A model generated the notes under the pieces. The model was not told the DNA's origin. It saw only the letters and a list, made by a program, of their open reading frames with translations, and made no database searches. DNA of 64,000 bases from Selaginella moellendorffii (Eukaryota > Plantae > Lycopodiophyta): positions 123,985 to 187,984 of the forward strand of contig NW_003314372.1 in assembly GCF_000143415.4 (NCBI RefSeq), in the 5' to 3' direction. The number at the start of each line of letters is the position of its first letter. Position 1 is the first letter of the stretch. The translations under genes were made by a program, and so were the position numbers. This document shows positions 13,310-58,199 of the stretch, one piece after another.

Positions 13310-15298
13310 TCAGGATCGAGACATGTACAATCTTTGATCAGCATGGAGGTGGGAGAGAGCTACATAAGCAGAATGATCGAAGGGATCCAGCTGCAGAACA
13401 CGTCTGGCTGCCTCGGATCCTCGTTCTTTGTCGTGGTGAGTTCTGCAAGCACCAAGAAACGCCATCCGAACGGATTGGTCGGGTGGAAACGGCATGGATG
13501 TGGTAACTTTCTCGGCTATATCAAGACGACCAGCTCTGCCCAGCAGATCGATCAAACACGAGTAATGCTGCGAATTGCACATAAGTTGGTAGTCACATTT
13601 CATCCCTGCAAAGTACTGACAACCTTGACTGACCAGGCCACCGTGAGCACAAGCAGACAACACGGCATTCAACGTGATTCCATCGGGCTTGAAGCCACCG
13701 TCCTGCTGCATTTCCCAGAAGAGCTTCAGTGCTCTCTCAGAATTTCCGTTCTGAGCGTTTGCCGCAATGTAAACGTTACACAGCACCAGGTTCTTCACTG
13801 CCACAGCATTGTAGGCCCGTTTCGCCTGCTTCAGGTTGCCACAACCACTGTACATCTCAACCAAAGCAGCAGCAACGTCCACCTCGCTCTGGAATCCAGA
13901 AGCCACAATCTGGGAATGAATCCAAAGGCCATCGCTTAGACTCCTACAGGAACTTAGCAGCTCCAGGAACGTTACTTGGTTGGCACGAACTCCAGAATGA
14001 AGCAGTCTCCGGAAAACTACCAGAGCGTCTTGGAACTGAGCTCGCTGGGAGAAGGCCGCGATCAGAGCAGTACAGGAAATAACATCCGGAGAGCTGATAG
14101 AGCCGAAGACTTTTCTCGCTCCTTCAACGTCACCACACTTTCCATAGAAGCTGACGAGCGCATTCGTGACTTGGAGGCTCGACTGGTAGCCGCTCTCGGC
14201 AATGCAATTCAAGACGAGCTGGTAAAACGGAGGAACTGGAGGATCGACAAGGTTTTTCTCCATGGAGCTAAGGATGGACAAAAAGGTGGCTCTGTCCGGT
14301 CTCCTCCCTTCGGCCATCATCTCCATGAACAGCGACGCCACTCGAGGAGCTTCTCCTTCCTCCGCAGCAGCGTTGATCATCACGTTCCAAGAGATTTCGT
14401 CTCTCTCAGCCATGGATTGGAAGACTCTCGCCGCTGCAGCAAGATCACCACACCGAGCAAGCATTCCAACGCAGGCATTGGCAACAACAGTCACCGCTCC
14501 AAATCCGGACCCGACGATCTGCTCGTGGATCAACTTCGCAGCACGAAGATCTTTACTACCAGAGAAGAGCACTAGCGTCGAGCTAAAGGTGATCTCGTTT
14601 GGCCTCACACCTTCCAGCTGCATCGATCGAAACAGCCGCATTGCCTCGGCGAGCTCCCCCAACCTGGCAGACGCTGCGATCATCACAGTCCAGGACACAA
14701 CGTTTCTTTCGGGCATCCTCTCGAAGACTTTCCAGCAGCTTCGAAGATCCAGCCTCTTGCTATACATGCTCATCAGCGCGTTGGCAACGATTAGTTCCTG
14801 TTCCAGGCCACTCTCGACGATCCATCCGTGGACGCAAGTTGCCAGTTCCTGCGATTCATCTAGAGCGAGAGCGCCCAGCATCGCGACGAAGCTCACGGCG
14901 TCCGGGATCACTCCCTCGAGCAGCAGGCAGCGGAAGAGATAGATGGCCTGGTGGAAATCTCCGGAGTGGACGTAAGCGCTGATGATCGCGGTCCAGGCAA
15001 GCTTGCCTCGAGCCGGCATTGTGTCGAGCACTCTGCGCGCGTCGGCGAGGCTGCCGCATTTGAGATACATCTGGACGAGCTGGTTTCCAAGGTGGTGGTC
15101 GCGATCCAGCCCGGAGCTGACGATCCGCGAGTGGATCATCCGGGCGGTGGCGAGATCTCGCGTGGTGGAGCTGCATTCTCGCATGAGATTCGCGAGGAGT
15201 GATCGAGGGGGAAGAACTTTTGGTGGAGATGGGAGTGACTCGCTACTAAAGAAGGCCTTGAAGAGGAAGTGGGTGTTTCCAAGAGAGTTCTTTCTCAT
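13310..15298 (-). CDS. PLS-class pentatricopeptide repeat protein with E-type C-terminal extension (organellar RNA editing factor type), no DYW
   Basis: Repeated LVxMYxKCG..A..VF..M..RNVVSWTxMI motifs; VLSACAHGGLV..G..YF; HYSCLIDLLGRAGRL; AFLGACRTH; SAYVALSH. Confidence 0.92.
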   Translation of the reverse strand: MRKNSLGNTHFLFKAFFSSESLPSPPKVLPPRSLLANLMRECSSTTRDLATARMIHSRIVSSGLDRDHHLGNQLVQMYLKCGSLADARRVLDTMPARGKLAWTAIISAYVHSGDFHQAIYLFRCLLLEGVIPDAVSFVAMLGALALDESQELATCVHGWIVESGLEQELIVANALMSMYSKRLDLRSCWKVFERMPERNVVSWTVMIAASARLGELAEAMRLFRSMQLEGVRPNEITFSSTLVLFSGSKDLRAAKLIHEQIVGSGFGAVTVVANACVGMLARCGDLAAAARVFQSMAERDEISWNVMINAAAEEGEAPRVASLFMEMMAEGRRPDRATFLSILSSMEKNLVDPPVPPFYQLVLNCIAESGYQSSLQVTNALVSFYGKCGDVEGARKVFGSISSPDVISCTALIAAFSQRAQFQDALVVFRRLLHSGVRANQVTFLELLSSCRSLSDGLWIHSQIVASGFQSEVDVAAALVEMYSGCGNLKQAKRAYNAVAVKNLVLCNVYIAANAQNGNSERALKLFWEMQQDGGFKPDGITLNAVLSACAHGGLVSQGCQYFAGMKCDYQLMCNSQHYSCLIDLLGRAGRLDIAEKVTTSMPFPPDQSVRMAFLGACRTHHDKERGSEAARRVLQLDPFDHSAYVALSHLHADQRLYMSRS

Positions 15299-15319
15299 GG
15301 TTTGCTGGAGTGAAAGTCA

Positions 15320-15821
15320 TACCAAACACTCCATGGAATGAAAATACAAAACTAATTAGACTTTCAGAACTGGAGGTAGCGTCCATGGCTACTCCTGGGA
15401 CCAGCCTGCAGAAACGGGTTCGGAGTAACACTCTGTATCCTTGGAAACTGTCTTTGCAACTCCGGCACGATGCTCTGCATGAAATCCGCATCCAAAAGCT
15501 TGTCCAGAAGCAAAACAGCATCATCTGCCACACTGCTACCGACCATCTCGGCTGTCACTACGATCTTGACAGGCCGCTTGAAACCAGTTCTCGTGTTGAT
15601 CTGTTCCATGCTGCCAAAGTCAATGCGGTATGAATCTCCTGAAGGGTGGGAGCTGGAAACGAGAAGACCTTGGAGCCGGATTTCTTCGCAGCCATGATCT
15701 TTGAAGATAAGTTGGAATTATATTCCTGCCAACGGATCATATATTTAGGAGGGTCATCTTTGATGCCTTGAAAGATCAGCCAAGATTTTGATCATTTTTC
15801 ACAATCAGCATATTCTATCAT
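15320..15821 (-). pseudogene. WWE + PARP/ADP-ribosyltransferase-like pseudogene, copy 1
   Basis: WLIFQ..RWQEYNSNLSSKIMAA (frameshift) YRIDFGSMEQINTRTGFKRPVKIV is a WWE pattern; then IVPELQRQFPRIQSVTPNPFLQ..YLQF and FVFSFHG; internal stops. Confidence 0.65.
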
Positions 15822-15879
15822 TTAGGGTGTACGAATTGCTCTTCACTATTGACTCTACACTCCAAAGCAATACATGCGC

Positions 15880-17670
15880 TTTCAACAGCTATCCTCATTC
15901 CCTTGGTAGAACGCAAAGAATTTTCTTGCGTCTAAAATGCACGTACCTTGGATAGCCACAACGTTTGAAGCTGAAAGCACTTGCTTGAATAACTCTCCCT
16001 TCTTTTTCTCCCACAGACGAACGCCACATCATTGTGGAAAAAACTTCTTTCAAAGCCAAGGCCATAGAAGCATTTGCAGGCCTTGTGTTCAGCAATGCTT
16101 CCTTGACAGCTTTCCCCTTTCTGAAGCTGACACTCCCTGGCATGTCGCCAAGATTCAGGAACAAGCTGGTGTATAGTACCTGGAGCTCTGGTGCTATCCC
16201 GAAAAAATCTCTAGAACACTTTGCAAATTCTACATGACTGCCCCCAAAGACTGACTTGCAGCAGGCTGAAAGTGTCACCCGTGAAGCCCAATAGGATCAG
16301 GTCGACTCCCCCCTTCGGGCAGATGATTCCAACACCCGCCTTTCCCAGTGCAAACATTTGCTCCTTCTTGGTATGTCGAGCTTTTTAAACTGCAAGCACA
16401 AGAACTTCCCTTTCGCCACCTTTTCCCAACGCTTCCGCTGAGAAACATCCTCTTTGCAAAGAAGCGTCTTCCCGCAAAGGCTGCCACACAACTCCTCTAG
16501 AGTGAAGTTCACTGCAAGTAACAGCAGCAGTCGTGCCACAAGCTCCCCTTTGCAACCAGCATCGATCCAACCTTTCTGGAGCCCGTCATGAATGTTCCAA
16601 ACAAATCTTCCATTCGGCGGCTGTCTCCGCAAAACAAGAGCTGCAGCCGCTGCAACTGCTGGCCCCACGGCCCAATCCGTCCAGACACGCCGCAGGTCCG
16701 AGATGGACTCGACGGTAAGCAAATGGCTGGCAACCATGCGAGAGACAATGCTGGCCTGCGGGTTAATGTTGATGCACACCGACGGCCAACTTGGCCTCTG
16801 TTGATATCGTACCATTATGATGAAACTTATTAGATGTTCCAGTACCACCAAGGAGCTTCTCCACAGCAAGGACCTGTACCCGACTTCCGCAAGCCTTGTA
16901 CATTGCTGCCCACAACGGACGGACGTATGCAAAGAGACGACCCGAATCTGTGACTTGATCGAGCGAAAGGCTGCCTGTTTCCGGTGGCGAGCGCGCCGCA
17001 AACATGCAGTAGAGAGGATGTGCAACGAGCGCTCCTTCTGCACCGACACGGTCGCCGGGATGAGCCTCTGGACCAGGAGCTAAGCTGTTGATAATACTGC
17101 TGCAGGTGTCGATGAAGATAGCAGCCACATCTCCTTTGTCTGGCAGAACCCTGGTGGCTCTTGTGGCAGGCACGACGGCGTCGAAAGCTCCTTCATATTG
17201 GCCGTGAGCAAACCATCGGGCTTCGTCATGACAAGCAAAACCTTGGGCTTCCCCAGATGGAGACTCTGGCAAGTCCTTGAGTTTGTTGCGAATCCTCGTT
17301 CTACTTCCCGCAAGTGGCAGCTTCTCTTCCCATTCGTCCCAAACGTTGGATTCCTTTCCATGGAAGCGCAAGAGAACCGACAGGAGCTTCCCGGTCGTGT
17401 TTCCGTCGCTCCAAGCATCCGCTCCTCCAGGAATGCTTCCAACTTCATCTTCATCTCCACGGCTGTGCGATTCGAAGTAGTCCATGCAAAAGAGCATGAA
17501 CCTGCTTTGCAACACAAGCAATGTCCCCGAGCAGAGTAAGGTGACAGTGCTGTCATAGAAGAAATCGGGAATGGAGGGTATGTGGAGCCAGAGGCCAGCA
17601 GTAAACCATGAACACACCCCGAGTCACAAGCTCACACGTAGTGCTCGACTTTCACAGTTTGATACCTTTG
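15880..17670 (-). pseudogene. Crinkler-like NTPase-nuclease paralog A, decayed (many small deletions, Walker A deleted)
   Basis: Collinear with 41313-43465: DEARWF, IFIDTCSS, HPLYC, GRLFAY.RPLW, MVASHLL, GELVARLLLLLAV; frameshifts throughout. Confidence 0.85.
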
Positions 17671-17982
17671 TTGGAATCCTTCCTTCAAAATGTAAACACA
17701 AGACTAATCTTATTCATTATAATAAACTAGAATATACTAGGAAGTTTTTGTTTATAAATTATAAATATAAGATTAATATAAATGAATAAAAATTGATAAA
17801 TAGTAGAATATTTTAGAATATTCAAGTATATTTTACCCAAATTCCTAGAAATTTCCTTAAGCAAATATATAAATAGTGCTTGGAAATAGGTATAATAATT
17901 AGGGTATAAACTCCTGCTTATATATATGGCTGGACTATATTTAGTCTCAAATGGATATATTATACTACTATAATTAGTATAT

Positions 17983-17984
<2 letters not shown>

Positions 17985-18048
<64 letters not shown>
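17985..18048. repeat. (TA)n microsatellite
   Basis: Perfect TA run. Confidence 0.95.
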
Positions 18049-18052
<4 letters not shown>

Positions 18053-18165
18053 CAAACCTTACACTATCCTCCCCTTTATAAGATAAAATAATAATGATAA
18101 TAAGTTAGGTGGAACATTTGACATTTGGAGCTTTTATTAAATGATTATAAACTACTACAAAAACT

Positions 18166-19816
<1,651 letters not shown>

Positions 19817-20044: not shown

Positions 20045-20217
20045 ATGAAATATAGAAATAAAATTGTCAAACATGTATGTAAAAACATTTTATGGAAATT
20101 TGAAAATATTTTCTTAATTTTACAAGTTGATGGAAATCTACTAACACATGGTCTATACGCAAATATTGTGAGAAATGCATTTTTATTATGTATCTTATTA
20201 TTGAAGATAATTGTGAT
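20045..20217 (+). pseudogene. Fragment of the bulb-lectin gene at 34790-35677
   Basis: AAAAACATTTTATGGAAATTTGAAAATATTTTCTT..TTACAAGTTGATGGAAATCT..CAAATATTGTGAGAAATGCATT..TATCTTATTATTGAAGATAATTGTGA matches ~35400-35583. Confidence 0.8.
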
Positions 20218-20269
20218 GGACAAATGCAGGGTTGATCATTATGTTCCAGGGGATTTTATCTTTCTCAGA

Positions 20270-20781
20270 CGAGATCACCACACCAAGGAAGCATTCCAAC
20301 GCGGTATTGGCAACAACAGTCACCACTCCCGCAGCACGAAGGTATTTACTGCCAGAGAAGAGCAACTAAAGGTGATTTCATTGGGCCTCACGCCTTCCAG
20401 CTGCATCGCTCAAAACAACGGCATTGCCTTGGCAAGCTCCCCCGATCAACACAGTCCAAGACACAACGTTCCTCTCGGCCATCCTTTCGAAAACTTTCCA
20501 GCAGCTACGAAGGTTGCTATACGTGCTCATCGTCGACGATCCATCTGGACCCAAGCTGCCAGTTCTTAATTCATCCAGAGAGAGCGCTCCCAGCATCGCG
20601 ACGGAGCTCATGGCGTCCGGGATCACTCCCTCGCGCAGCAGACAGTGGAAGAGATCTAAGATGGCCTGGTGGAAATCTCCCGAGTGGACGTAAGCGCTCA
20701 TGATCGGCAAGCTTGCCTCGAGCAGGCATTGCGCGAGCACTCTGCGAGAGTGGACAACGCTGCCGCATTTTAGATACATCC
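20270..20781 (-). pseudogene. Deleted partial duplicate of the PPR gene at 13310-15298
   Basis: MYLKCGS..SAYVHSGDFHQAI..EGVIPDA..LRSCWKVFERMAERNVVSWTV; collinear with ~14440-15070. Confidence 0.88.
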
Positions 20782-20899
20782 ACGCCTTAATTTTTAGTAT
20801 CATGGATTGTCCGCTTTTAGGGTGGGCGCTATATTGCAACTAGGTTCGTTTGTAGAGAAGGATGAATCGCAAGGATGTGCCGGAGCTTCGCAATAATGC

Positions 20900-23417
20900 A
20901 AAGAGGGCAAGCGGGACGAGCTGCAAAGGAAACGTGAAGAAATATATAGGGAGCTCCTGGAGATAAACAGGGAGCTTCTGAAGGAGCCAGCGGAAGCCGT
21001 GGATCAGGACACTATCCAGCCTTTCGCAGAAGCATTCAAGACTAAGTATCGAAGATGCGGTGTAGATAATGTAGGGCTCTTGCATTTTGAGCTTGAAACA
21101 GTGTCTAAGGACTGGTGTAATGGGCATGCCAGGGTAGCTCCTGTTGTGACTCTTGTGCAGTCGAGTGGCTGGGGAAAGTCGAGGACTGCTGTGAGCTTGC
21201 GAATAGGGGTGTGTTTGTGGTTTACTGCTCCTTCGCCTCGGCCTCCGGCTCCGCGTACCCTCCAAGGTCCGCCATTGCCGATTTCTTCTACGACAGCGCT
21301 GTCACCTTGCTCAGCTCGGGGCCATTGCTTGTGTCCCAGAGCAGGTTCATGCTCTTTTGCATGGACTACTTCGAATCGTGTATCGACACAGCCGTGGAGA
21401 TGAAGATGGAGCCGGAAGCATTCCTCCAAGAGGTAATGCTTGGAGACACTTTCTGGAGCACAGTAAAAGAGAAAATAAGGAATCGGAAAGGAGTCCGGGA
21501 GAAGCTGTCCAGCATACTCGAGCCAGGTCTATTGAAGAAGTCTTTCAACGTCTGGGGTGAATGGGAACAGAAAGTAACGCTGGGAAGAGATACTAGAATC
21601 ATGAAGAAACTCCAGGGCTTGCAAAACCCTGAATCTGGTATTCTTAAAGTCTTGTTTGTGATGGACGAAGCCAGATGGTTTGCGCAAAGCCAGGATCCTA
21701 CGGCTTTTGAGGCATTCATCCCTGCGAGAAGAGCAGCCAGAATTCTTCCCAACACAGGTGGTGCTTGTGTTCTCTTCATGGATACCAATGGCAGAAGAAC
21801 CAACTTTGCACCGCCATCCGAAGCTCACCCAAGTCACCGTGTGTATGGGCTTGGGGTTTCCGTTCCTCATCCTCTATACTGTACGTTTGTGGCACACTCA
21901 CCACCACAAACAAGCAGCCTTACCGTCGCTGAACTCAAGGAACCCGGTCGTTTGTTTGCATACGGTAGGCCGTTGTGGAGAGCCCTTTACGAGAAGCTCG
22001 ACGCGGATCGGGTACTAACCATGGCAGTGGATAAGCTCCTTGGTGGTACTGGGAAGCGTGCTAAGCTACAAGAAGGAGAGGTCTCCACCGCAGCTAAGTT
22101 GGCTGTACTTGGCTCCAGGGTGTGCCTGGACATCAACCCCCAGGCCACCATAATCTCTCGCATGGTAGCCAGTCACCTGCTTAGTGTGGTGTCCATATCA
22201 GATGACCGGCATCGTGTTTGGACAGATTGGACGTTTGAGCCTACGGTTGCAGCGGCTGCAGCTCTTGTTTTGCGGACCAAGCCAATGCCGACGACCTCTG
22301 GGTGGAAGATTTGTTTGCAAGAACTAGAGCAGAGCTTGCTACGTGGCTGGATCGATATTGGATATAAAGAGGAGCTTGTGGCACAATTGCTGCTGTTACT
22401 TGCGGTGGACAGACTAGAGAAGCATGTGTTTGACTGCTTCACTCTAGAGGAGTTGTGTGGCAGCCTTTGCGGGAAGACCCTGTCGTCACAGCTTCTGGAC
22501 AAGTGGTGGATCTTCAAGGCTAAGTTTTTATGCTTGCAGTTCAGAAAAGTAGATATTCCAATCGGAGGGTTACCGGCAGAGCATCTGTTTGAACTGGGAA
22601 AGGCAGGGACTGGAATCATCTTGAACGAGGGAACTTTGGGAACAGATTTAGTTCTTGTGGGGTTCAGAGGGAATATCTTCAAAGTGTCCACTATGGTGTT
22701 AATCTTAATCCAGGTAAAACTGAGGAAGACCCTAGGGGACATAAATGTCCTAGCAGCTAAGTGCTCTACGGAGTTTTCGGGGATAGCCCCTGGTTTCCCT
22801 TACGTGACTTTAATCTTAAATGTCGCGGCTGAGGTGGAAAATGGTGAAAGAACCGCTGTTCTCAGCAGGAGCGATGTGAAGAAGAGGATTCTTGATATGA
22901 CTCCAAAGAGTAGATCCATGGCAACTGCGTTAAAGAATGTTTTCCCAGAATGCCAGGAAGTTGCATTGTGGGAGGAAAAACACGGTGCCTTGGAAGGTGA
23001 AGACAAACCGTGCACAGCGGTTACAAGAGCATGGACACAATACTTTTCTGGAAATTCTGATCTTCAGAAAGTTATCGTTGTCGAAGGTACAGGTTGGTGA
23101 ATTTGTATCTCAGCAATAAGTGCATTATATTTTGTTGTACAGGTCTGAAGGCATTCTCGGATGCAAAAGAAGTTGAATGCATAGTCAAGCATTCGCTGAG
23201 TTCCACTAAAGGAATGAGGAGGCTTGAGCAGCAGAGTCAGAAGAGTTTGGCGGAGCGGATGTTCAGCCACTTGGGAAAAACTAAGCTTCCGTTGCAAAAG
23301 TGAGTGCTTTTATTGCTAGTTTTTGTGGATTAAAAGTTTTATTTATATTACAGATCTAACAAGGAAGCACAAAAGGAAGCAAAGAAGGGAACATGTGAAA
23401 ATGTAAGGATGGTTTAA
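20900..23417 (+). pseudogene. Crinkler-like P-loop NTPase + PD-(D/E)xK-like nuclease paralog B; near intact, one -1 frameshift at ~21188; introns 23087-23142 and probably 23300-23353
   Basis: Walker A VTLVQSSGWGKSR, Walker B LFVMDEAR, GRPLW, MVASHL..EP.VAAAA, ELVAQLLLLLA.D, C-terminal TDLVL...LILIQVK. Spliced C-terminal exon GLKAFSDAK.. is conserved with 40868-41030. No start ATG found in frame upstream of the P-loop. Confidence 0.8.
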
Positions 23418-25838: not shown

Positions 25839-28800
25839 TGTCGCGAATGTGACTTCGGGTATCGAAAGTTACCTGTCGGCTAGTCCTTACGGACACTCTT
25901 ACCTTACTGCCACGATGGCAGGAGGTCGGTATTGCTGGACCCTTTATTAGTCCCTCTTATTCAAGTGTTAGTAAACTGGACTTTGCATCTGTACTTGGCC
26001 GGATGAGCATAAGGAAGGAATTCCTAAGTGTCTATTTAGCTGAGCATACTTGGCCCGGCTTGTTAGTTCTCTTTTGCTCTGTCTTGCACTGGCTTGACAA
26101 GAACCCTCGCGTATTGAGATTGGTCCCTCAATATTGCTACATGATAGCTTACCGTGTCTGCCAAACACCCTCGCTATCATGCCCTTTGTGTTAGTCTCAA
26201 TTTGTCCCAAATGCTATTTATGGAAAGTGTCCAGATTTGCTCATTTGGCATATCTACGGAATGTAGAGATCGGCCTGAACACAATGGTGTTCGTCCCGTG
26301 TCCAAATTCACAATCTAAGGACATTCCATATTTAGTAAGTTTCGAGATTGTCCCAGAGACTAACTCCTGATACTAAGGGAGGCTTGGGGTGAAAGCCCAA
26401 AGCGTGTGTTCCTCAAGGGGGGGGGGGGGGGGGGGGGGCTATGGGGGGTTCCAAATGTATAGTAGGGATAGTGGGTAGGTCGGGCATGGCCGACCAACCT
26501 GAGGCATAGTCTAGCTCCCGCTTGCGTGCCTATCCTTGTTCTGCGTCCGGCTTGGGTCTAAGCCCAAGTTCCATTCCATGCTAGTTGGTGGAGTACCCAT
26601 ACTCTCACGTTAGGCCACCGGTATGCCGAAATAGCGCCAAACTCCGTTTGGCTCCGTTTTGTGTGCTAGTCCTGGCATTGGGATGTTGGTTGCTTCAGGA
26701 CTGTTCCAAGTCGCTCCGGGCTCCTGTCCCTTCGCTCCTTGGGCTATATGCTCGGGAGTTGCTCCGTGGTCCGGTTCCATCACTCCTTGGCGTCACGCTT
26801 AGGAGTTTGGCACCGTTCCTTCGTTCAGTGGCCCAAGGCCCTGAACCTCGGGTTCCTATGGACACGTGGCATGGACACGTGGTATGTGACATGTGGCATC
26901 TGTCACGTGGCACAAAGAGGGTTTAGGTTCCGCTTCGTGGTGTTATCCTATGGTAAATCACCATAGGATAAAGGGTCAAAACCACGTGCGCTACATTTGG
27001 TATCAAAGGATGAGTCTCAGCGAGTGCTATTCAATGAGATTGGGCAACTAGTCTCATTGCATACGCAGAGATGAAAACGATGATCTGAGTGGGTACACGT
27101 TTGGGTGCAAAGGCTTCGCAATCGTTCCTTAGGTATGTGAGCTTGCTCTTAGGCTCATAAGATGGATTTGAGTTGTTCCGGTTGCACGAGTTTGCGCTTG
27201 GGCTCGTGAGTGAGGCACATTAGCAACTCAAGGTTACACTTTGAGTTGGCAGGATTAATGTTAGCCTATCGGTGGTTCCATGAGTTGTTCCTTGTACCAT
27301 AGGTTAAAGCAACTTTCCCTGGGTTTGCTATGAGTGGCAAATAGGCTGGTCCATAGCTGTTTAGCACGGCACTAGTGGATCCTTCCTAGGCATGATTATA
27401 ATTGGATCAATCAAGACTGTAGGGAATAGTCTATTGGTTCAAGTAATCATTGCCGTGCTCTCTCATAAACTTTTCTTGGATTGAACTGAAGGCAGTGCGA
27501 AAGCAAGCTTGAGGTTTGGTCAAAGATGAGACCGAAAAGAGAGTCGTCAGGGACGAAGGATCAAATACGTAAATCATTTTCTCTTCTTGGAGAGATGATT
27601 TGCAACGAAGTGTTAACTCATTGCTTGTGTTTACATTATGCAATCAAGAGTCCCTACCTTGATGCATGTTGGAAATGATGGTCTTACAAATGGTGAGTTG
27701 TGGGATGGATAGCGGTGAAACGTTATACCATTTTGTCTAAGCTTGCTATGGAAGACTGGGGTTGCAATGCTCAATTCTTTTCCAGGGAACCTTGCTATTG
27801 CTCCTTGAGTAGCTTGGTGTTGGAATAGTTTTGAGATTGGTCGGAAAGAGAGTGGCATAAGCTTGTCTGTGTTATGAACAAAAGTTAGTGGTGTTGGGTG
27901 TCGTAAATCTCTATTGGTGGAGTGTGGCATTTATGTTGCATTTTGTCGAATCGAGTTGGCATTTGATACTCACATAAACGTTTAAAGTAATGACATAAGC
28001 CTTGCTCATTGCGTTACTCAATTGATGATCAAGTCATTGTGATTTATATCATATCCATGTGATAATGAGCAATGTGTTTACGAAGTTGCTTGGGTAAATG
28101 ATGATCAACCCCAAAGTGGTTGATGGAGAAGCTAGTCTACTTGCACGAAGTAGCATTGTAGTAGCCTTGACTGGATTCTCAATGGTGGTCCATTATGCTA
28201 AGCTTATGTTGGTACCTTGTTTCCTTGAGGGTTTGCCCATAAGGTGTTGGAAAAGGGTTATAGCATTCATTTGTTATAGCTCATCGGTTGATCCATTAGC
28301 ACTTGGAATAAATTATTGAATGGAGAAGGTGTGTAGTTGGGGCATTGACATCACTAGCACTTGTGTTAGTGGAAGTGGCATTGTTATTTCAAGTGATGAG
28401 GAATTTTTCTTGGACCTTGATTTTTCATGTCATTTATCTTGTTAGTGTTTTGGCTTCACATTGGATCTTGAAGGTGATTGAAGAAGAGTGTTAGTGCAAT
28501 GTGGATATCCGAAGATGTGGTCTTAGTGATCAAGCCTTGGATGTTCATTTTGCACTTTGCGGATGACGGTGTTGGATATCGGTTAGATGGGCAAAGATGT
28601 TCGATGCTTAAGCATGTTGTTCGATCATGAGAATTTGTGTTGAGGTGAGCCTATGTGAAGTTGTTGGTAGGAGGAAGTTGGTGAAGTCTTGAAAGTTTGC
28701 AATCCTGGACTGAGAGTCATTCTTTATCTAGGATGGGAAATTTTCCACAAATTTTCTTAGACTTTTCCAATGGCTAATCTATTGATCATTTTGTCCGAAA

Positions 28801-31800: not shown

Positions 31801-33096
31801 AAAGAGGTTGCCCCCTAACTCATTTAAGTTGGTGCATTTCTCACATAGTGTGAGTATCGTGAACTTTTTTCTGGAGTTGTTTCCTTGGCGGTATTCTAGA
31901 CTGGAGTATGCATATCGACGAGGACGTCGATTTTCCCAAGGGGGGGAGAGTGTCGCGAATGTGACTTCGGGTATCGAAAGTTACCTGTCGGCTAATCCTT
32001 ACGGACACTCTTACCTTACTGCCACGATGGCAGGAGGTCGGTATTGCTGGACCCTTTATTAGTCCCTCTTGTTCAAGTGTTAGTAAACTGGACTTTGCAT
32101 CTGTACTTGGCCGGATGAGCATAAGGAAGGAATTCCTAAGTGTCTATTTAGCTGAGCATACTCGGCCCGGCTTGTTAGTTCTCTTTTGCTCTGTCTTGCA
32201 CTGGCTTGACAAGAACCCTCGCGTATTGAGATTGGTCCCTCAATATTGCTACATGATAGCTTACCGTGTCTGCCAAACACCCTCGCTATCATGCCCTTTG
32301 TGTTAGTCTCAATTTGTCCCAAATGCTATTTATGGAAAGTGTCCAGATTTGCTCATTTGGCATATCTACGGAATGTAGAGATCAGCCTGAACACAATGGT
32401 GTTCGTCCCGTGTCCAAATTCACAATCTAAGGACATTCCATATTTAGTAAGTTTCGAGATTGTCCCAGAGACTAACTCTTGATACTAAGGGAGGCTTGGG
32501 GTGAAAGCCCAAAGCGTGTGTTCCTCAAGGGGGGGGGGGCTATGGGGGGTTCCAAATGTATAGTAGGGATAGTGGGTAGGTCGGGCATGGCCGACCAACC
32601 TGAGGCATAGTCTAGCTCCCGCTTGCGTGCCTATCCTTGTTCTGCGTCCGGCTTGGGTCTAAGCCCAAGTTCCATTCCATGCTAGCTGGTGGAGTACCCA
32701 TACTCTCACGTTAGGCCACCGGTATGCCGAAATAGCGCCAGACTCCGTTTGGCTCCGTTTTGTGTGCTAGTCCTGGCATTGGGATGTTGGTTGCTTCAGG
32801 ACTGTTCCAAGTCGCTCCAGGCTCCTGTCCCTTCGCTCCTTGGGCTATATGCTCGGGAGTTGCTCCGTGGTCCGGTTCCATCACTCCTTGGCGTCACACT
32901 TAGGAGTTTGGCACCGTTCCTTCGTTCAGTGGCCCAAGGCCCTGAACCTCGGGTTCCTATGGACACGTGGCATGGACACGTGGTATGTGACATGTGGCAT
33001 CTGTCACGTGGCACAAAGAGGGTTTAGGTTCCGCTTCGTGGTGTTATCCTATGGTAAATCACCATAGGATAAAGGGTCAAAACCACGTGCGCTACA
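25839..33096 (+). mobile_element. Non-autonomous LTR retrotransposon (LARD-like), 7258 bp; LTRs 25839-26995 and 31951-33096
   Basis: TG..CA LTRs near identical (9 transitions plus a G-run length difference by eye); TSD GGATT (25834-25838, 33097-33101); PBS TGGTATCAAAG (tRNA-iMet-like) at 26998; PPT AAGGGGGGGAGAG 31938-31950; no gag/pol ORF inside. Confidence 0.95.
26861..26988 (+). promoter_or_regulatory. G-box/ABRE-like cluster and hairpin at the LTR 3' end (repeated at ~32962-33089)
   Basis: CACGTG at 26863, 26876, 26904 and 26983 (incl. GACACGTGGC); 12-bp-stem palindrome TTATCCTATGGT-AAATC-ACCATAGGATAA at 26943-26971. Confidence 0.5.
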
Positions 33097-36329: not shown

Positions 36330-37431
36330 TGGAATTCCTAAGTGTTATTATGCAAGCATACTTGATCTAATTAGAAAAAAACTCATTCCTTAGTTTGCAC
36401 TTACTAGTGTTGGGAAACCCTATGAAATTAAGCTTAATTGCTCAATACTTGCTAGATAATAGCTTAACATATTTACCAAGTGTAATGCACGTGGTTTTTA
36501 CTCTTTATTCTATGGTGATTTACCATAGGATAACCATGAAGTAGAATCTAAACCCTCTTTGTGCCACGTGACAGATGCCATGTGTCATATACCATATGTG
36601 GACAGTGGTGTGGAACCCGAGTTTCAAAGCCTTGGGCCACTGAATGAAGAAATGGTACCAAACTCCTAGCATAGAGCTAAGGAGTGATGGCACTGGAGCA
36701 CAAAACAACTCCCAAGTATATAACCCAAGGAGCGAAGGGACAGGAGCACGGAGCAACTTGGAACAGTCTTAAAGCATTAAGCATCCTAATGCCAAGACTA
36801 ACATGCAAAATGGAGCCAAACGAAATTTGGTGCTATTTCAGTATACCGGTGGCCTAAAGCAAGGATATAGGTACTTCACCAGGTAGCATGGTGTGGAGCT
36901 TAGGCTTAAACCTAAACCAGACGCAAAACAAGGATAGACACGCAAATGGGAGCTATGCTTTAGGTTGGTCAACCATCCCCAACTTACCCACTATCCCTAC
37001 TATACATTTAGAACCATATCCCCCCCCTGCCTTGAAGAACACACGCTTTGGGCTTTCACCCTAATCCTCCCTTAGTTTCAAGAGTTCTATTTTTTTGTTC
37101 GATGACCGAAGGCTTTAACTTGGGTTTCACTCCATTACCCATCCAAGGGTTTAGGTTCCACTTTGGTAAAACACCATAGAGTAAAGGGAAGAATAAATTT
37201 TAATTACCAATTTGTACCATATAATGTGAGCTTTTGCTTGTTCTCATAGGATGGGTTAAGATGCACCATTTGCACAAGTTTGTGCTTGGGCTTGTGAGTG
37301 AAGCATATTAATAGTTTAAAGTTATACTTTGAGTTAGCAAGATTAATGTTAGCTTATCATTGGTTACATGAGTTATTCTATATTATTGTGAGTAAAAGTA
37401 AACCTCCCCTAAATTTGCTATGAGTGGCAAA
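36330..37431. mobile_element. Older fragments of the same LTR family: inverted LTR 3' half 36481-37085 amid plus-strand LTR/internal remnants
   Basis: 36481 TGTAATGCACGTGGTTTT.. is the reverse complement of the LTR end at 26995; 37223-37431 matches ~27135-27340. Confidence 0.8.
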
Positions 37432-37899
37432 TNNNNNNNNNNNNNNNNNNNNNNNNNNNNNNNNNNNNNNNNNNNNNNNNNNNNNNNNNNNNNNNNNNNN
37501 NNNNNNNNNNNNNNNNNNNNNNNNNNNNNNNNTATATCGAGTACACCATAGAAAGAATTAGCTATCTCATGCATGCACTTTACCAACTCTAGAGTGTTAA
37601 TCCATGAAGTATCACTATTGTTACTCTTGACAATCTCTTTTACAGTGCTATGAATTTCAATATGTAGAACATTAAACTCTCAATAAATCTTTGGCTTCCT
37701 ATCATAAAATTGTTCCTTCCCAAGAGGAACATCTATGCTACCAAAATCCATAACTTAGAACGAAGGATAGTTACGAATCACTTAAACTATTAAAGAAACA
37801 CTCAAAACCTATCCACCTTAAACACATATGCTATATCCATCTATCATAACTACTTCATAGATTATTTTGTCACAAACAAACCAAGTTTCTTCACCACCT

Positions 37900-40089: not shown

Positions 40090-40625
40090 ATTTTTTTAGC
40101 GGAGATAGAGAATTACTAAAGAAAGCTTTCAAAAGGAATTGCGAGTGAAAGTTTCCAAGCTTATACAAACATTTAAAAACTAGAAACACAGTCTTCCAGA
40201 TCTTATGACAATGGACGGCACAAATATAACTCCGATTTGTCATCAGAGATCATGGCTGCCAAGGCATCCGGCTCCTCATCCCTTGATCTGTGTGTGATTT
40301 CCTCGAGAAGTCCATACCACATCGACTTTCAAGCGCATGTTCAAGATTAACTGAGACGACGAATCGTGTTTCAAGGTGGTAGTCTTGCGGGGCCCTGTGA
40401 TCAGAGCCGAGGGGAGGTTGAGTTAATGGAGATCGTCATGCCCGAGCTGTGAAGTAAGTTTCAGAGGAGAGAGCGTTACCGAATCCGTTTTTGCGGGGTC
40501 AGCAGCAGCCATGAATTGTACCTCCAGTTTTGCTCCAAGGTTTTGGCCCAAATCTGAAAATTCACGGTTTTGATGTTTGTTTCCATGGAACTCCCACCCA
40601 AAATATTGAATCCATCTTGCAAATC
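40090..40625 (+). pseudogene. WWE + PARP-like pseudogene, copy 2
   Basis: DNGRHKYNSDLSSEIMAAK..PYHIDF; ELYLQFCSKV; CFHGTPTQNIESILQ (TTC CAT GGA ACT at 40581-40592); frameshifted. Confidence 0.7.
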
Positions 40626-40867
40626 TGACCAAGATCTTTGCAACTGATCCATGGGTGTCAATTCAATATTGCCACCCAAACTCATACTGCAAACCCGTCA
40701 GCCACCATGATCGTACTCTTGGATATGGGTTCAAGGCACAAAGTACCCATCCGTACATTAGCGATCTCCCAGCTTGTATGAGTTCCTGCTAAGCACAATA
40801 GATTTCTGTTTTTATTTTCTTTCCACAATAGTATTAGTTAGAATTGCCAATGTAGTATTTTAACAAA

Positions 40868-41166
40868 CTACACAAGTTTGCGCACTTTGCATTTTCCCAC
40901 AAAGCAATACATGCGCTTTGAACACCTCTCCTGACTCCTCTGCTCCAACATCCTCATTCCCTTGGTAGAACGCAAAGAAAATTTGAGAAGATCTTCAACT
41001 CTTTTTGCGTCTAAAAATGCCTTTAAACCTGAAAAAAAAACATTAAAACACATTAAAAAAACATAAAAAAAACATTTAAACGCACCTTGGATAGCCACAA
41101 CGTTTTGAAGCTTAAAGCAACCTTTGAAATAAGCTTTCCACGCTTCATAAGATTGGCTAACGGCAT
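40868..41166 (-). pseudogene. C-terminal exons of a Crinkler-like NTPase-nuclease paralog (left of gap)
   Basis: SYEAWKAYFKGCFKLQNVVAIQ | intron | GLKAFLDAKRVEDLLKFSLRSTKGMRMLEQRSQERCSKRM; same intron position as paralog B. Confidence 0.8.
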
Positions 41167-41312
41167 ANNNNNNNNNNNNNNNNNNNNNNNNNNNNNNNNN
41201 NNNNNNNNNNNNNNNNNNNNNNNNNNNNNNNNNNNNNNNNNNNNNNNNNNNNNNNNNNNNNNNNNNNCAATGATCTCAGAAAAGGAAAGGGAAAACGGCA
41301 GGCAGCAAACGA

Positions 41313-43465: not shown

Positions 43466-43559
43466 ACCCTAACTAGGTTAAAAAGACGGTACTGCAAAAG
43501 CTAAATTGAATATCAAAGTAAACTTATAATAAATGAAAGATTTTCCATGAAAGGAAACA

Positions 43560-43960
43560 TTAAGTTTCACCTAGATTTCTGAGAGCCTTGTTGCGTCTCT
43601 TGAGACCACTCAGCAGAAACGGATTTGGCTTAACACTCTTTATCTTTGGAAACTTGCTTTGCAACTCTGGCACGATGAAATCCGTATCCAAAAGCTCGTT
43701 CAGAAGCAAAACAGCACCATATATCTCGGCTGCGATTCCAGAACTTGATGCCACTCCTAGTTCGCGTGTTCATGGTGCTGAAGCCAATGCGGCATGAATC
43801 TCCTGAAGGGTGGGAATTGAAAACAATGACAGATTGTGTGACCGTATTTCCTAGAAGCCATGATCTTTGGAGACAACTAGATCAATGTTTTTGAACAAGC
43901 ATATTCTAATTACTTAAAAACGGATTTACGGCACTTTTAACAATCAGCATATTCTATCAT
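43560..43960 (-). pseudogene. WWE + PARP-like pseudogene, copy 3
   Basis: Shares start context CCTAAATGATAGAATATGCTGATTGT with copy 1; SKIMAS.., CRIGFSTMNTRT, LLLNELLDTDFIVPELQSKFPKIKSVKPNPFL. Confidence 0.65.
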
Positions 43961-43993
43961 TTAGGGCATTATTCTTTTAGGGCTCCACAGGGA

Positions 43994-45010
43994 ATGGAGA
44001 AGGCTGCCCTGTTCGTGGTCTACTGCGGCGCGGGCTACAAGGGAATGCAGCGCAATCCTGGCGCCTTGACGATCGAGGGAGTGTTAGAGGAGGCCCTGGG
44101 GCGAGCTGGGGCGATCGGATCAAATGGGTGCTCCAGGAACTGGCTGGATTGGAAGCGCGCCGCAAGAACTGACAAGGAAGTGAGCGCCCTAGGGCAAGTT
44201 GTGTCGGCCAGGCTCTACCTCACCCCCGATCTCGTCCATCGCACCAACGAGTTCCTCCCAGGATCCATCCAGCTGCTGGGATTCAAGCGCGTCCCGGACG
44301 ATTTCAGCGCCAAGAAGATGTGCGATTCGCGGCGCTACGAGTATGTGCTTCCAGTCTTTGCGTTTGATCCGCGGACTGGGGATGATCTGGAGGAGGAATT
44401 CTTGTTTGATTTCGAGCGATTCAACCAGATCTTGGGACGATTCCTGGGGACCGATCACAGTTTCCACAATTTCTCGTGGCGCGTCCGGCCGGGCGACCGC
44501 GAGGCGCGGCGGACAGTGGTGGAATTTCGAGCGGCGGACAAGATCTGGATTGGAGGGAGCGAGTTTGTGAGGATCATCGTGCTTGCCCGGAGCTTCATGG
44601 CATACCAGATCAGGAAGATGGTGGGATTGGCAGTGGCGGTGATGCGAGACATCGCTCCAGTCACGACGATCAATCGGGCGCTAAGGAGGTAACAAACAGA
44701 GTGATCTATTCATCATGGATCATCGAACACTTTTCTTTCCTATGGCAGCGAAGTGGATGTGATCGTCCCCACTGCTCCGGAGGTGGGGCTTTTGCTGGAC
44801 GAATCCTTCTACCACGACTACAACGCAGCGGCGTCCACGCCCGAGGAATCGAGGATCGCTCTGGGGCTGGAATTTGGGGAGGCGATGCAGGAATTCAAGA
44901 GCAAGGTGATCTACGCGCACATTGCTCATCGCGAGCGCGAGCAGGGCATCGTTGCCAAATGGTTACCCTCTCTCAATGCCAAAAACTACTCGGCTCTGAG
45001 CATATGCTAG
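43994..45010 (+). CDS. tRNA pseudouridine synthase, TruA/PUS1 family; exons 43994-44688 and 44749-45010
   Basis: YCGAGYKGMQRNPG..TIEG, AARTDKEVSA (catalytic Asp), CDSRRYEYVLP, HSFHNFS, SFMAYQIRKMVG, PTAPEVGLLL; 60-nt GT-AG intron. N-terminus may be truncated. Confidence 0.88.
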
Positions 45011-45087: not shown

Positions 45088-45247
45088 GTGCGTGCGGCTT
45101 GTAAAATCCCTTGGAAAGAGGCATTCCAACAGAATTGTGTACAATGTGACAATGTGGAGCTCTTGCGCGCTGTGTTCCAGGACATAGGGGAGGATGAGAA
45201 GAACAGTGTGACCATGGTGCAGTCGAGTGGCTGGGGAAAGTCGAGGA
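45088..45247 (+). pseudogene. N-terminal fragment D of the Crinkler-like NTPase
   Basis: KEAFQQ..DNVELLRA..VTMVQSSGWGKSR, ending abruptly after Walker A. Confidence 0.85.
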
Positions 45248-45805
45248 GATTTAAACCCCGCTGCAAGATGGATTCATGGGTGGTGGAAACAAACATCAAA
45301 ACCGTGAATTTTCTGATATGGGCCCAAACCTTGGAGCAAAACTGGAGGTACAATTCAGGGCTGCTCCTAACCCCCTCTTGCAAAAACGGATTCGGAGTAA
45401 CGCTCTGTATCCTCTGAAACTTCAACGATCTCCATCAACTCAACCTCCCAAAACCGAGCCTGGCAAGCTCTGAAACACGATTCTTCATCTTGCACAATCT
45501 TGACCAGGGACTTGAAGCCGCTCCTTATGTTGACTTGCTCCATGGTGCCAAAGTAGATGTGGTACGGACTTCCCAAGGAAATCACACCCAAATCAAGGGA
45601 TGAGGAGCTGGATGCCTTGGCAGCCATGATCTTCGATGACAAATTGGAGTTATTTGTAATAAATACTAAGTCAATCAGCCTTTTGGTATGAGAAAGGACT
45701 TCCTAAATGTTTGTATAAGCTTGTTTGTTTGAAACGTTCACTCCAAAGAACCACAAGAAAGAACTCCTAATTCCTTTTGAGTAAGTCTCATTTCCACCAA
45801 AATCT
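45248..45805 (-). pseudogene. WWE + PARP-like pseudogene, copy 4 (inverted partner of copy 2)
   Basis: YNSNLSSKIMAAK..PYHIYFGTMEQVNIRSGFKSLVKIV; RIQSVTPNPFLQ..LYLQFCSKV; CFH..ESILQRGLN; upstream AAGCTTATACAAACATTTA shared with ~40158. Confidence 0.7.
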
Positions 45806-47211: not shown

Positions 47212-47718
47212 TTGTGTCCAAGTTCGTAATCTAAGGACATTCTATATTTAGTAAGTTTTGAGCTTGTCCCAAAGACTAACTCCTAGTACTAAAAAGGAGG
47301 CTTGGGGTGAAAGGCCAAAGCATGTATTTTTTGTTCCTCAAGGGGGGGGGGGGGGGGGGGGGGGCCCTTGGGGTGGGCCAAGGGGCCAATTATGGGGGGT
47401 TCCAAATGTATAGTAAGGATAGTGGTTGGAATATTTGTCTAACCACTTGAGACATTAGTTTGGCTCCCGTTGGGTTGTGTCCTTCTTTATTTTACATCCA
47501 ACTTGGGTCTAAGCCCAAACTCCACGCTCCTCTAGTTAGTGGTGTACCCTCCTCTTCGCATTAGACCACCGGTATACCAAAATTGTGCCAAACACCATTT
47601 AACACTATTTTACGTGTAGGTGTTAGATATGGGGAGCTAGTGGTCGTAGGATTGTACTAGACCCTCATTTTGTAGTGTAATAGACTTGGAATTTAGCTCC
47701 AAATTTAAGTGCACTACA
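47212..47718 (+). mobile_element. Diverged LTR (3' part) related to the 25839-33096 family
   Basis: AATCTAAGGACATTCTATATTTAGTAAGTT..GAGGCTTGGGGTGAAA..poly-G..TTCCAAATGTATAGTAAGGATAGTGG; ends GCACTACA. Confidence 0.75.
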
Positions 47719-58057: not shown

Positions 58058-58199
58058 AAAATATGTAGCCCTATCAGTTGTTTAAAAGACCTTCATTGAC
58101 TTTCCATTTGTTGACTTTGCCGGTGCCTCGGTTCTCAGTCTCTCAGCTCTCACCAGGAATGTATATACAGCTGCGTATATACACCTTATTTTTTTTTCT

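What the first reader, a model, noticed from the sequence alone, without database searches (positions are those of the whole stretch)
15320..15821. Unannotated WWE + FHGT-type ADP-ribosyltransferase-like family (four decayed copies)
Piecing frames across copies gives W..(x)W.EY.S.LS.KI.AA ... YRIDFGSMEQINTRTGFKRPV (WWE), a linker, RIQSVTPNPFL..LYLQF, then CFHGTPTQNIESILQRGL (FHGT intact at 40581), the His-bearing first strand of PARP catalytic domains. Plant WWE-PARP proteins (RCD1/SRO) generally lack the canonical catalytic His, whereas WWE + FHGT resembles animal PARP7/11/12/14-type mono-ARTs. The ORF track misses this because of frameshifts. The downstream Tyr/Glu catalytic positions are not preserved in any copy.
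Basis: partly seen in the sequence, partly recalled or inferred. Interest (0 to 1): 0.8.

Follow-up and report, generated by a model that had tools for sequence, protein, structure and literature searches.

The report
Dead copies of spikemoss WWE-PARP-like gene
These are four broken, non-coding leftovers of a small spikemoss gene that joins an ADP-ribose-reader (WWE) domain to a short PARP-like enzyme domain; the intact gene lies 27 to 57 kb away on the same scaffold, so the relics are ordinary pseudogenes of an unusual, little-described plant gene family.

Summary
The window is Selaginella moellendorffii scaffold GL377676.1. It holds four frameshifted, stop-ridden relics (A 15358-15737 -, B 40204-40769 +, C 43544-43876 -, D 45250-45672 -) of a WWE + PARP-like gene.

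The intact relative is a 274-codon intronless ORF 9138 nt beyond the window's end. It is annotated as hypothetical proteins SELMODRAFT_429141 and SELMODRAFT_425577. It passes Pfam's thresholds for both WWE and PARP, keeps the His and Tyr NAD-site residues, and has no RST domain. By architecture it is therefore not RCD1/SRO.

The relics form two groups: {intact, A, C} and {B, D}. B and D are arms of an inverted duplication.

Both haplotypes of copy A lack the start codon and carry a frameshifting deletion at the same WWE site, so sequencing error is excluded. The window's haplotype has also lost 325 bp that the other haplotype keeps. There the whole PARP-like part is still one open frame.

Copy B and the other-haplotype copy A keep it.

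The short enzyme domain could not be folded confidently, and no tree against SRO was possible.

The scan found this family before on other DNA of this genome (s1-411679, s1-405267, s1-395611, s1-421258, s1-394736). These relics add a birth-and-death cluster to that picture, not a new kind.

The parts
15358..15737 (-). Relic A (window haplotype). Homolog of codons about 8-147 of the intact gene: the WWE domain minus its first strand, the linker, and the start of the PARP-like domain up to GRYLQF followed by a stop.
   Evidence: tblastn E = 2.7e-35, read in two frames. 87% nt identity to the intact gene over gap-free columns. Three-way alignment with the intact gene and the other haplotype. Pfam WWE 26.6 bits.
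15795..15828 (-). Conserved 5' flank of relic A. The block is also upstream of the intact gene (L001:9863-9896) and of relic C (43932-43966).
   Evidence: 91% identity to L001:9863-9896. 94% identity to 43932-43966. Alignment.
15358..15360 (.). Junction of a haplotype-specific deletion of about 325 bp. It removed the rest of the PARP-like part (codons about 148-247) and brought the relic next to the PPR gene start.
   Evidence: L004:10252-10576 has no counterpart between window 15358 and 15360. Sequence shown. Short TTCTG repeat at both edges.
13310..15298 (-). Intact PPR gene directly downstream of relic A. On the other haplotype, RefSeq model XP_002986657.2 extends this gene upstream through the relic.
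   Evidence: ORF. Called gene. The P0021 N-terminus begins MEQINTRTGFKRPV, which is relic A, and then runs on into an out-of-frame reading of the ART part.
40204..40769 (+). Relic B, nearly full length (codons about 6-235). It has at least 3 frame changes and at least 3 in-frame stops. It keeps FHGT, the FATDP strand (Ile at the Tyr site) and two later strands.
   Evidence: tblastn HSPs in frames 1, 3 and 2. Downstream local alignments. Motif coordinates. Pfam WWE 21.6 bits.
40581..40592 (+). FHGT codons of relic B: the His-bearing first strand of the PARP-like domain.
   Evidence: Aligned to FHGS of the intact gene and FHGT of PARP catalytic domains.
43544..43876 (-). Relic C (codons about 32-165). 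It has at least 2 frame changes and ends right after KLNVSFHG.
   Evidence: tblastn E = 1.3e-15.. Coordinates. 79% nt identity to the intact gene over gap-free columns.
45250..45672 (-). Relic D (codons about 15-180). It has at least 3 frame changes and ends at ESILQRGL. With relic B it forms the arms of an inverted duplication.
   Evidence: tblastn. Inverted repeat arms 40226-40585 and 45284-45653, 90-93% complementary in the best blocks. B and D are 84% identical over gap-free columns.
45148..45247 (.). Fragment of the neighbouring 'X' gene family, joined directly to the truncated 3' end of relic D. It is an inverted copy of 43195-43315.
   Evidence: 92-98% complementary.

Best explanation
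The four stretches are pseudogene relics of a small Selaginella moellendorffii gene family. The family encodes an N-terminal WWE (ADP-ribose/iso-ADP-ribose reader) domain, a linker of about 45 residues, and a shortened PARP-type ADP-ribosyltransferase domain. They arose by local DNA-level duplication, flanks included, within a 60-kb neighbourhood that still holds one intact member 9138 nt beyond the window's end. They have since decayed neutrally and make no functional protein. Relics A and C are closest to the intact gene. B and D belong to a more distant subgroup and are arms of an inverted duplication. Shown here: homology, domain identity of the parent, the lesions, their presence on both haplotypes, and the grouping. 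Inferred: the intact parent reads ADP-ribose with its WWE domain and binds NAD+ through the retained His/Tyr site, acting as a mono-ADP-ribosyltransferase or an NAD-dependent sensor. That activity is untested, and the fold of the C-terminal half of the domain is unresolved.
For: Organism and position: window 63138-64000 is 100% identical to L001:1-863 of GL377676.1, GCA_000143415.2. Parent gene: L001:10001-10825 is a 274-codon ORF with Pfam WWE at E = 3.7e-10 and PARP PF00644 at 28.7 bits, above the 26.7 cut-off. The AF2 model of its WWE part has pLDDT above 93. Its 11 best structural matches are all WWE domains, Z 8.7-12.3, against 4.5 or less for unrelated chains. Alignment with PARP catalytic domains lines up RIQSV..NPFL, FHGS and YFATD with the canonical motifs. 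Relics: strong tblastn hits, each spread over several frames with stops. Copy A lesions shared by both haplotypes: a 58-bp deletion of the start codon, a 33-bp deletion and a 9-bp insertion. Each haplotype also has a frameshifting deletion at the same WWE site (13 bp and 40 bp). Private lesions follow in each haplotype: a 325-bp deletion here, and a 1-bp deletion and others in the other haplotype. Differences between relic A and the intact gene are spread almost evenly over codon positions (17/10/15). For intact versus the hap-2 copy A ART part, dN/dS is 0.5. The two alleles of the intact gene give dN/dS 0.25, with 0 nonsynonymous and 6 synonymous changes in codons 143-256. Grouping: {intact, A, C} and {B, D}, 100% bootstrap for the B/D split. 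No gene model covers relic A in the GenBank annotation.
Against: None of the relics alone reaches a Pfam PARP hit; the PARP assignment rests on the intact paralog and on the other haplotype's copy A (27.0 bits). The PARP profile match covers only profile positions 46-113 of 199. Two AF2 runs left the enzyme domain below pLDDT 50, and hhalign gave only 36% probability. The completeness of the ART fold and the third catalytic residue are therefore unknown. Transcription was not tested. A RefSeq model on the other haplotype runs through relic A, so the relic may be transcribed as a leader of the PPR gene. The duplication history is only partly resolved, and assembly gaps (100 N at 41168-41267) lie inside the B/C/D region.
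Confidence: 0.9

Rival explanations
1. The copies are working genes, and their apparent frameshifts are sequencing or assembly errors, short introns or programmed recoding.
For: The assembly has N gaps near copy B. The genome is eukaryotic, so frame changes can in principle be introns. A RefSeq model (XP_002986657.2) does include part of relic A.
Against: In copy A the start-codon deletion is found independently on both assembled haplotypes, and both carry a frameshifting deletion at the same WWE site. Each haplotype adds private lesions. Homologous residues on either side of the frame changes are contiguous, leaving no room for introns. The parent gene is intronless. Each relic has several stops and is truncated. 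The RefSeq model reads the ART part out of frame.
Confidence: 0.03
2. The relics are fragments of an ordinary RCD1/SRO (WWE-PARP-RST) gene.
For: RCD1-type SROs are the only WWE + PARP-like proteins described in land plants (PMC2848248, PMC2964712, PMC4245714). Pfam PF00644 also covers SRO PARP-like domains (my own knowledge, not tested here).
Against: The closest intact relative, 87% nt identical to relic A, ends about 25 residues after the ART core. It has no RST or other Pfam hit even at E up to 10. It keeps His and Tyr, which RCD1 has replaced (L-H-N; PMC2848248). A HMMER scan of 1.84 billion representatives with relic A returned 15 hits. Pfam found no RST domain in the 14 hits outside the query's own family. 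The PDB profile search did not reach the RCD1 PARP-like domain.
Confidence: 0.03
3. The fragments were captured and spread by a mobile element (Pack-MULE or Helitron-like gene capture, or carriage with the repeated 'X' unit), not by plain segmental duplication.
For: All four are truncated or rearranged. They lie beside copies of the repeated X family in three arrangements. The region is rich in repeats and retroelement sequence.
Against: No terminal inverted or direct repeats bracket any single copy. The only inverted repeats are the B/D and X arms themselves. About 140 nt of upstream flank is shared with the intact gene. All copies lie within 60 kb of the intact gene. X has no transposase-like Pfam or PDB hit.
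Confidence: 0.07
4. Relic A is exapted: it now serves as promoter or 5' leader of the adjacent PPR gene. This can hold alongside the pseudogene reading.
For: Relic A ends 60 nt from the PPR start codon after the 325-bp deletion. RefSeq on the other haplotype models a transcript or ORF running from the relic into the PPR gene.
Against: The GenBank annotation of this haplotype starts the PPR gene at its own ATG. The RefSeq extension may be a purely computational ORF extension. No expression data were available here.
Confidence: 0.15

Closest known systems
Intact Selaginella paralog SELMODRAFT_429141 / SELMODRAFT_425577 (UniRef D8T569 / D8STK0, 'WWE domain-containing protein')
   Same: Same family. 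It is 87% (A), 79% (C) and 63-64% (B, D) nt identical over gap-free columns. It has the same motif order: WWE, linker, RIQSV..NPFL, FHG(S/T), YFATDP. The upstream flank is shared with A and C.
   Different: It is intact (274-codon ORF), shows signs of constraint between haplotypes (dN/dS 0.25), and is annotated. The relics lack start codons, change frame, carry stops and are truncated.
Animal PARP11-type and PARP7/12/13-type proteins (PARP clade 3E: WWE followed by a mono-ART catalytic domain)
   Same: Domain order is WWE then PARP-like domain. The His and Tyr of the NAD site are retained. The RIQ.v.N..L motif lies before the His strand. PARP11 likewise consists of only a WWE and a PARP domain (PMC4245714).
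   Different: The plant domain is much shorter: about 135-160 residues after the linker, against a 199-position Pfam profile of which only positions 46-113 match. The third triad residue is unidentified. No direct sequence hit to PARP11 or PARP12 catalytic domains was found. Published surveys report clade 3 only from animals, Amoebozoa and ciliates (PMC2964712).
Plant RCD1/SRO family (PARP clade 2)
   Same: It occurs in a land plant. Some members have WWE followed by a PARP-like domain.
   Different: No RST domain. His and Tyr are kept (RCD1 has L-H-N). The protein is far shorter. No SRO appears among the HMMER hits.
Tpt1/KptA RNA 2'-phosphotransferase (ART superfamily)
   Same: A weak match of the HG(S/T)..NL.SIL..GL.P motif: E about 0.03-0.04 against PDB chains 9ld3, 9ld4 and 9ldc, and NCBIfam PRK00819 at E = 0.13.
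   Different: The second strand has Tyr (YFATD) where Tpt1 has His (VHVS). There is no Pfam Tpt1-family hit. The score is far below any cut-off. Tpt1 has no WWE domain.

Membership tests
WWE domain (PF02825) | Profile match above Pfam's gathering score | tested here: met
   Relic A 26.6 bits and relic B 21.6 bits (cut-off 21.1); relic D 19.9 bits, just below; relic C no hit. Intact paralog 40.5 bits.
WWE domain (PF02825) | WWE fold (half beta-barrel plus helix) | tested here: met
   Tested for the intact paralog only. The AF2 model has pLDDT above 93 over residues 1-72. The top 11 structural matches are all WWE domains (TRIP12, HUWE1, DTX1, RNF146, PARP14, ZAP, PARP11), Z 8.7-12.3.
WWE domain (PF02825) | Ligand-contact motif Y..D...M.Q.N..TG..R retained; actual ADP-ribose binding | not testable with these tools
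   The motif is present in the intact gene and relic A (YRIDFG.M.QINTRTG.KR), aligned to HUWE1, TRIP12 and PARP11. It is degraded in B, C and D. Binding itself needs an assay.
PARP catalytic domain (PF00644) | Profile match above the gathering score | tested here: met
   Intact paralog 28.7 bits, its allele P0016 28.8 bits, and the other-haplotype copy A 27.0 bits, against a cut-off of 26.7. The match covers profile positions 46-113 of 199 only. The window's relic pieces give no PARP hit on their own.
PARP catalytic domain (PF00644) | H-Y-E (or H-Y-hydrophobic) triad | tested here: inconclusive
   His is present in the intact gene, the hap-2 copy A, B and C. It is also present in D, where the frame breaks right after it. 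It is deleted in the window's copy A. Tyr is present in the intact gene and the hap-2 copy A, and is Ile in B. The third position could not be assigned because the alignments disagree and the models are unreliable.
PARP catalytic domain (PF00644) | Complete ART beta-sandwich fold | tested here: inconclusive
   Two AF2 runs gave pLDDT below 50 for this domain. hhalign against four PARP domains gave 36% probability.
RCD1/SRO (PARP clade 2) | C-terminal RST domain | tested here: not met
   No RST hit in the intact paralog at E up to 10 or in its allele P0016 at E up to 0.001. The ORF stops about 25 residues after the ART core.
RCD1/SRO (PARP clade 2) | Placement inside the SRO clade in an ART-domain tree | not tested
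   No SRO sequences could be obtained. The HMMER scan with relic A returned no SRO.
Animal PARP clade 3E (PARP7/11/12/13) | WWE immediately upstream of an H-Y-I/V mono-ART domain of full length | tested here: inconclusive
   Domain order, His and Tyr are met. Full domain length is not met: the domain is short and only half the profile matches. No specific sequence hit to clade 3E catalytic domains was found.
Tpt1/KptA | Family profile match and the R-H-R-R tetrad | tested here: not met
   Only a motif-level match, E about 0.03-0.13 and 11.7 bits against a cut-off of 231. Tyr sits where Tpt1 has the second-strand His.

The most novel reading that the evidence does not exclude
The WWE + mini-PARP genes may be a fast-turning-over conflict or immunity gene family of early land plants, functionally analogous to the rapidly evolving antiviral animal PARPs. 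On this reading, the cluster seen here (one live gene, four dead ones, haplotype-specific decay, repeated adjacency to the uncharacterised 'X' NTPase/nuclease-like genes) is the footprint of birth-and-death evolution of a two-gene defence module.
Probability: 0.1. Interest if true: 0.7.

Novelty: new variant of a known kind. Interest (0 to 1): 0.3.

Why it matters
The relics have no function of their own. They do show that the spikemoss WWE + short PARP-like family, which published PARP surveys of plants do not list (those give only PARP1-3-type, SRO and, in moss, clade 6), has duplicated and decayed repeatedly in one 60-kb neighbourhood and is still decaying differently on the two haplotypes. 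The other haplotype's copy A supplies a second, 77.6% identical sequence of the enigmatic short enzyme domain, which is useful for alignment and modelling. The work also exposes two annotation errors. SELMODRAFT_429141 loses the Tyr strand to a predicted intron. RefSeq XP_002986657.2 fuses relic A, partly out of frame, to a PPR gene.

Tried and rejected
1. Two word-index protein searches, with P0001 and with residues 112-274 of the intact ORF, found only P0001 itself. They gave no extra family members and no SRO sequences for a tree.

It found the parent but otherwise mostly WWE domains of multi-WWE PARPs. It could not be repeated with the full ORF.

3. AF2 with two hand-built shallow alignments failed on the enzyme domain. 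No fold search of that domain was attempted because a low-confidence model gives meaningless matches.

4. hhalign against four PARP domains reached only 36% probability. PDB sequence searches gave only weak Tpt1 and PARP16 matches.

5. I first took FSFHG at 15330-15344 as relic A's catalytic His strand. I rejected this after the other haplotype showed it lies in the 3' flank beyond the deletion.

6. Looking up gene models around relics B-D by exact ORF products failed, as did the first try for the PPR allele.

7. A repeat search found no transposon-like termini around single copies.

8. A-rich sequence at 41030-41078 was considered as a retrocopy poly(A) tail. I rejected this because it is an insertion inside sequence homologous to 15920-15945.

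Full report
**What is at the coordinates**

- RWQEYNSNLSSKIMAA in one frame;
- then, after a frame change, SHPSGDSYRIDFGSMEQINTRTGFKRPVKIV, a linker, and RQFPRIQSVTPNPFLQ...GRYLQF followed by a stop.

Related broken readings occur at about 40200-40770 (+), 43540-43880 (-) and 45250-45670 (-). tblastn with the pieces finds these four copies and no others in the window. Stop-free pieces of A and B pass Pfam's WWE threshold and D falls just short. FHGT starts at 40581, as stated.

**Where the window comes from**

A HMMER scan of 1.84 billion representative proteins with relic A's longest open piece (117 aa) gave one close hit, P0001, at 70% identity and E = 1e-36. P0001 is SELMODRAFT_429141 of Selaginella moellendorffii.

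Its locus, L001 on GL377676.1 of GCA_000143415.2, overlaps the window's last 863 bases at 100% identity. The window is therefore that scaffold, and the gene starts 9138 nt beyond the window's end.

**The intact parent**

At L001:10001-10825 there is an uninterrupted 274-codon ORF. The 213-aa GenBank model follows it for 189 residues. It then inserts an intron that skips the Tyr-bearing strand.

The allele on the other haplotype is SELMODRAFT_425577 (P0016, locus L002 on GL377640.1, same gene order around it). It is modelled through to the same stop codon.

Domain evidence for the ORF:
- Pfam WWE at E = 3.7e-10 and Pfam PARP at 28.7 bits (cut-off 26.7), the latter covering residues 155-214 against profile positions 46-113 of 199.
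- Aligned with PARP catalytic domains of multi-WWE PARPs found in the same scan, RIQSVTPNPFL matches the R(I/V)Q..QN..LW motif. VCFHGS matches LFHGT. LYFATDPSVSVPY matches TYFARDASYSVSY.
- No RST domain or any other domain is detected, and the protein ends about 25 residues after the last predicted strand.

Structure:
- An AF2 model gives the WWE part pLDDT above 93. Its eleven best matches among 48,161 PDB representatives are all WWE domains, Z 8.7-12.3, with the next chain at 4.5.
- The enzyme domain stayed below pLDDT 50 in two runs.
- hhalign gave 36% probability.
- PDB sequence searches gave only weak Tpt1 (E about 0.03) and PARP16 (E about 1) matches.

Membership of the ART superfamily, with a PARP-like H-Y site, is therefore supported. 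The completeness of the fold and the third catalytic residue are open.

Constraint: the two alleles differ by 8 synonymous and 7 nonsynonymous changes (dN/dS 0.25), with no nonsynonymous change in codons 143-256. This is weak evidence, from few sites, that the gene is maintained.

**Anatomy of the relics**

| Relic | Codons covered | State |
|---|---|---|
| A (window) | about 8-147 | Two frames, then a stop after GRYLQF |
| B | about 6-235 | At least 3 frame changes and at least 3 stops |
| C | about 32-165 | At least 2 frame changes; ends right after KLNVSFHG |
| D | about 15-180 | At least 3 frame changes; ends at ESILQRGL |

- Relic B keeps FHGT, IFATDPWVSIQYC (Ile where the parent has Tyr) and SATMIVLL...IRTLAIS.
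- Relic D abuts an inverted fragment of the neighbouring X gene family (45148-45247).

**The other haplotype settles the pseudogene question**

I reached the allelic locus L004 on GL377640.1 through the PPR gene next to relic A. Downstream of the relic the two haplotypes are 98% identical.

Between window positions 15358 and 15360, the other haplotype has 325 extra bases. These bases are the rest of the PARP-like domain. Codons 114-247 are there in a single open frame, 77.6% identical in protein to the parent, with CCHGSP and FYFATDP. They again reach the Pfam PARP threshold at 27.0 bits.

The three-way alignment shows lesions shared by both haplotypes:
- a 58-bp deletion that removes the start codon and the first WWE strand;
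- a 33-bp deletion;
- a 9-bp insertion.

Each haplotype also has a frameshifting deletion at the same WWE site (13 bp and 40 bp).

Private lesions follow:
- the 325-bp deletion in the window, flanked by a TTCTG repeat;
- in the other haplotype, a 1-bp deletion, a 3-bp deletion and a 4-bp deletion.

Sequencing error, introns and recoding are excluded. This is neutral decay, continuing after the haplotypes split.

Two further results fit this reading. Differences between relic A and the parent are spread nearly evenly over codon positions. dN/dS between the parent and the hap-2 ART part is 0.5, about what one constrained and one free lineage would give.

The FSFHG at 15330-15344 lies beyond the deletion and is a chance look-alike.

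**Relationships and history**

Over gap-free alignment columns:

| Pair | nt identity |
|---|---|
| A vs parent | 87% |
| C vs parent | 79% |
| B vs D | 84% |
| B or D vs parent | 63-64% |

A likelihood tree separates {parent, A, C} from {B, D} with 100% bootstrap. The live parent of the B/D subgroup was not found.

B and D are arms of an inverted duplication. A, C and the parent share a conserved block about 110-140 nt upstream of the start codon. Duplication was therefore at the DNA level with flanks.

The relics lie next to copies of an uncharacterised gene family X in three different arrangements. The X copies are at 15980-17653, 20148-23417 and 41313-43465, with a fragment at 45148-45247. 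None has a Pfam or PDB hit. That pairing is the subject of another first-reader note (s1-418389), and I did not pursue it beyond the map. No transposon termini were seen around single copies.

**Annotation**

The GenBank annotation of this haplotype calls no gene between 15298 and 20148.

On the other haplotype, RefSeq XP_002986657.2 (786 aa, named as a PPR protein) begins MEQINTRTGFKRPV. This is relic A's WWE tail and linker. The model then continues into an out-of-frame reading of the ART part and splices into the PPR gene. It is a chimeric model. Whether it reflects real read-through transcription is untested.

**Comparison with what is known**

Published surveys give land plants PARP1-3-type proteins and the SRO/RCD1 clade, plus clade 6 in moss. 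They give WWE-PARP mono-ARTs (clade 3E) only to animals (PMC2964712, PMC4245714, PMC2848248). No paper in the searchable library names the two Selaginella loci.

The family works, by inference, like a minimal PARP11: a WWE reader plus an H-Y ART. I do not file it as a member of clade 3E, because the domain is much shorter and no specific sequence link was found. I do not file it as an SRO, because the RST domain is absent and His/Tyr are kept.

**Standing in this scan**

The same family has been reported and followed up on other DNA of this genome (s1-411679, s1-405267, s1-395611, s1-421258). One of those reports calls it a small duplicating-and-decaying family. My results agree. They add the local cluster, the two subgroups, the haplotype-specific deletion and the annotation errors. 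The claim of an origin in streptophyte algae was not tested here.

**Limits**

Pieces were searched by reference, and stops were replaced by X only inside a local alignment script.
- No tree against SRO, no expression data and no genome-wide census were possible with the tools at hand.

Noticed in passing
L004:10001-10640 (other haplotype, GL377640.1); window equivalent 15298-15740: RefSeq XP_002986657.2 (786 aa, 'PPR protein At5g27110') is a chimeric model. Its first 125 or so residues come from relic A, and about 70 of them are an out-of-frame reading of the PARP-like part.
   Followed up: partly
L001:10001-10742: GenBank model SELMODRAFT_429141 (213 aa) inserts an intron into what is a continuous 274-codon ORF. 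It thereby drops the Tyr-bearing strand and the rest of the PARP-like domain. The allele model SELMODRAFT_425577 keeps them.
   Followed up: yes
window 15980-17653, 20148-23417, 41313-43465, 45148-45247: Repeated uncharacterised gene family 'X': an 888-aa gene model at 20148-23417, and 83% identity between 15980-17653 and 41366-43206. It has no Pfam or PDB sequence hit and lies beside the WWE-PARP relics in three different arrangements. Other notes on this window call it a Crinkler-like NTPase/nuclease.
   Followed up: partly
window 25839-26995 and 31951-33096: A direct repeat of 1157 nt at 98.3% identity, about 5 kb apart. It is probably the two LTRs of a young retroelement. Related sequence lies at 36474-37086 and 47214-47600.
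   Followed up: no
window 17934-19800: A very AT-rich block (GC about 0.25) of tandem and inverted repeats between the X copy and the PPR fragment.
   Followed up: no
window 20272-20780: A fragment paralogous to the PPR gene (72% identical to 14442-15071), next to the second X copy. The PPR gene seems to have been duplicated along with its neighbours.
   Followed up: no
window 37433-37532 and 41168-41267: Two 100-N assembly gaps. The second lies between relic B and the X copy, so the arrangement there may not be fully reliable.
   Followed up: no
window 57419-58874 and 60324-61843: A direct duplication of about 1.5 kb at 87% identity. A 109-nt element at 40878-40986 recurs inside both copies (58218-58326 and 61139-61247, 86%).
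   Followed up: no
window 43994-44692: An ORF with a weak Pfam PseudoU_synth_1 match (27.4 bits) between relics C and D. Parts of this stretch resemble the region upstream of the intact WWE-PARP gene (L001:9411-9789), but not collinearly.
   Followed up: no
P0002 / P0017 (Selaginella LOC112349277 / LOC112346420): A 343-aa Selaginella protein made only of WWE modules. Its WWE domains (GVWW...YKIDLERM.QVN) are the next-closest relatives of this family's WWE domain (E = 1e-10).
   Followed up: partly
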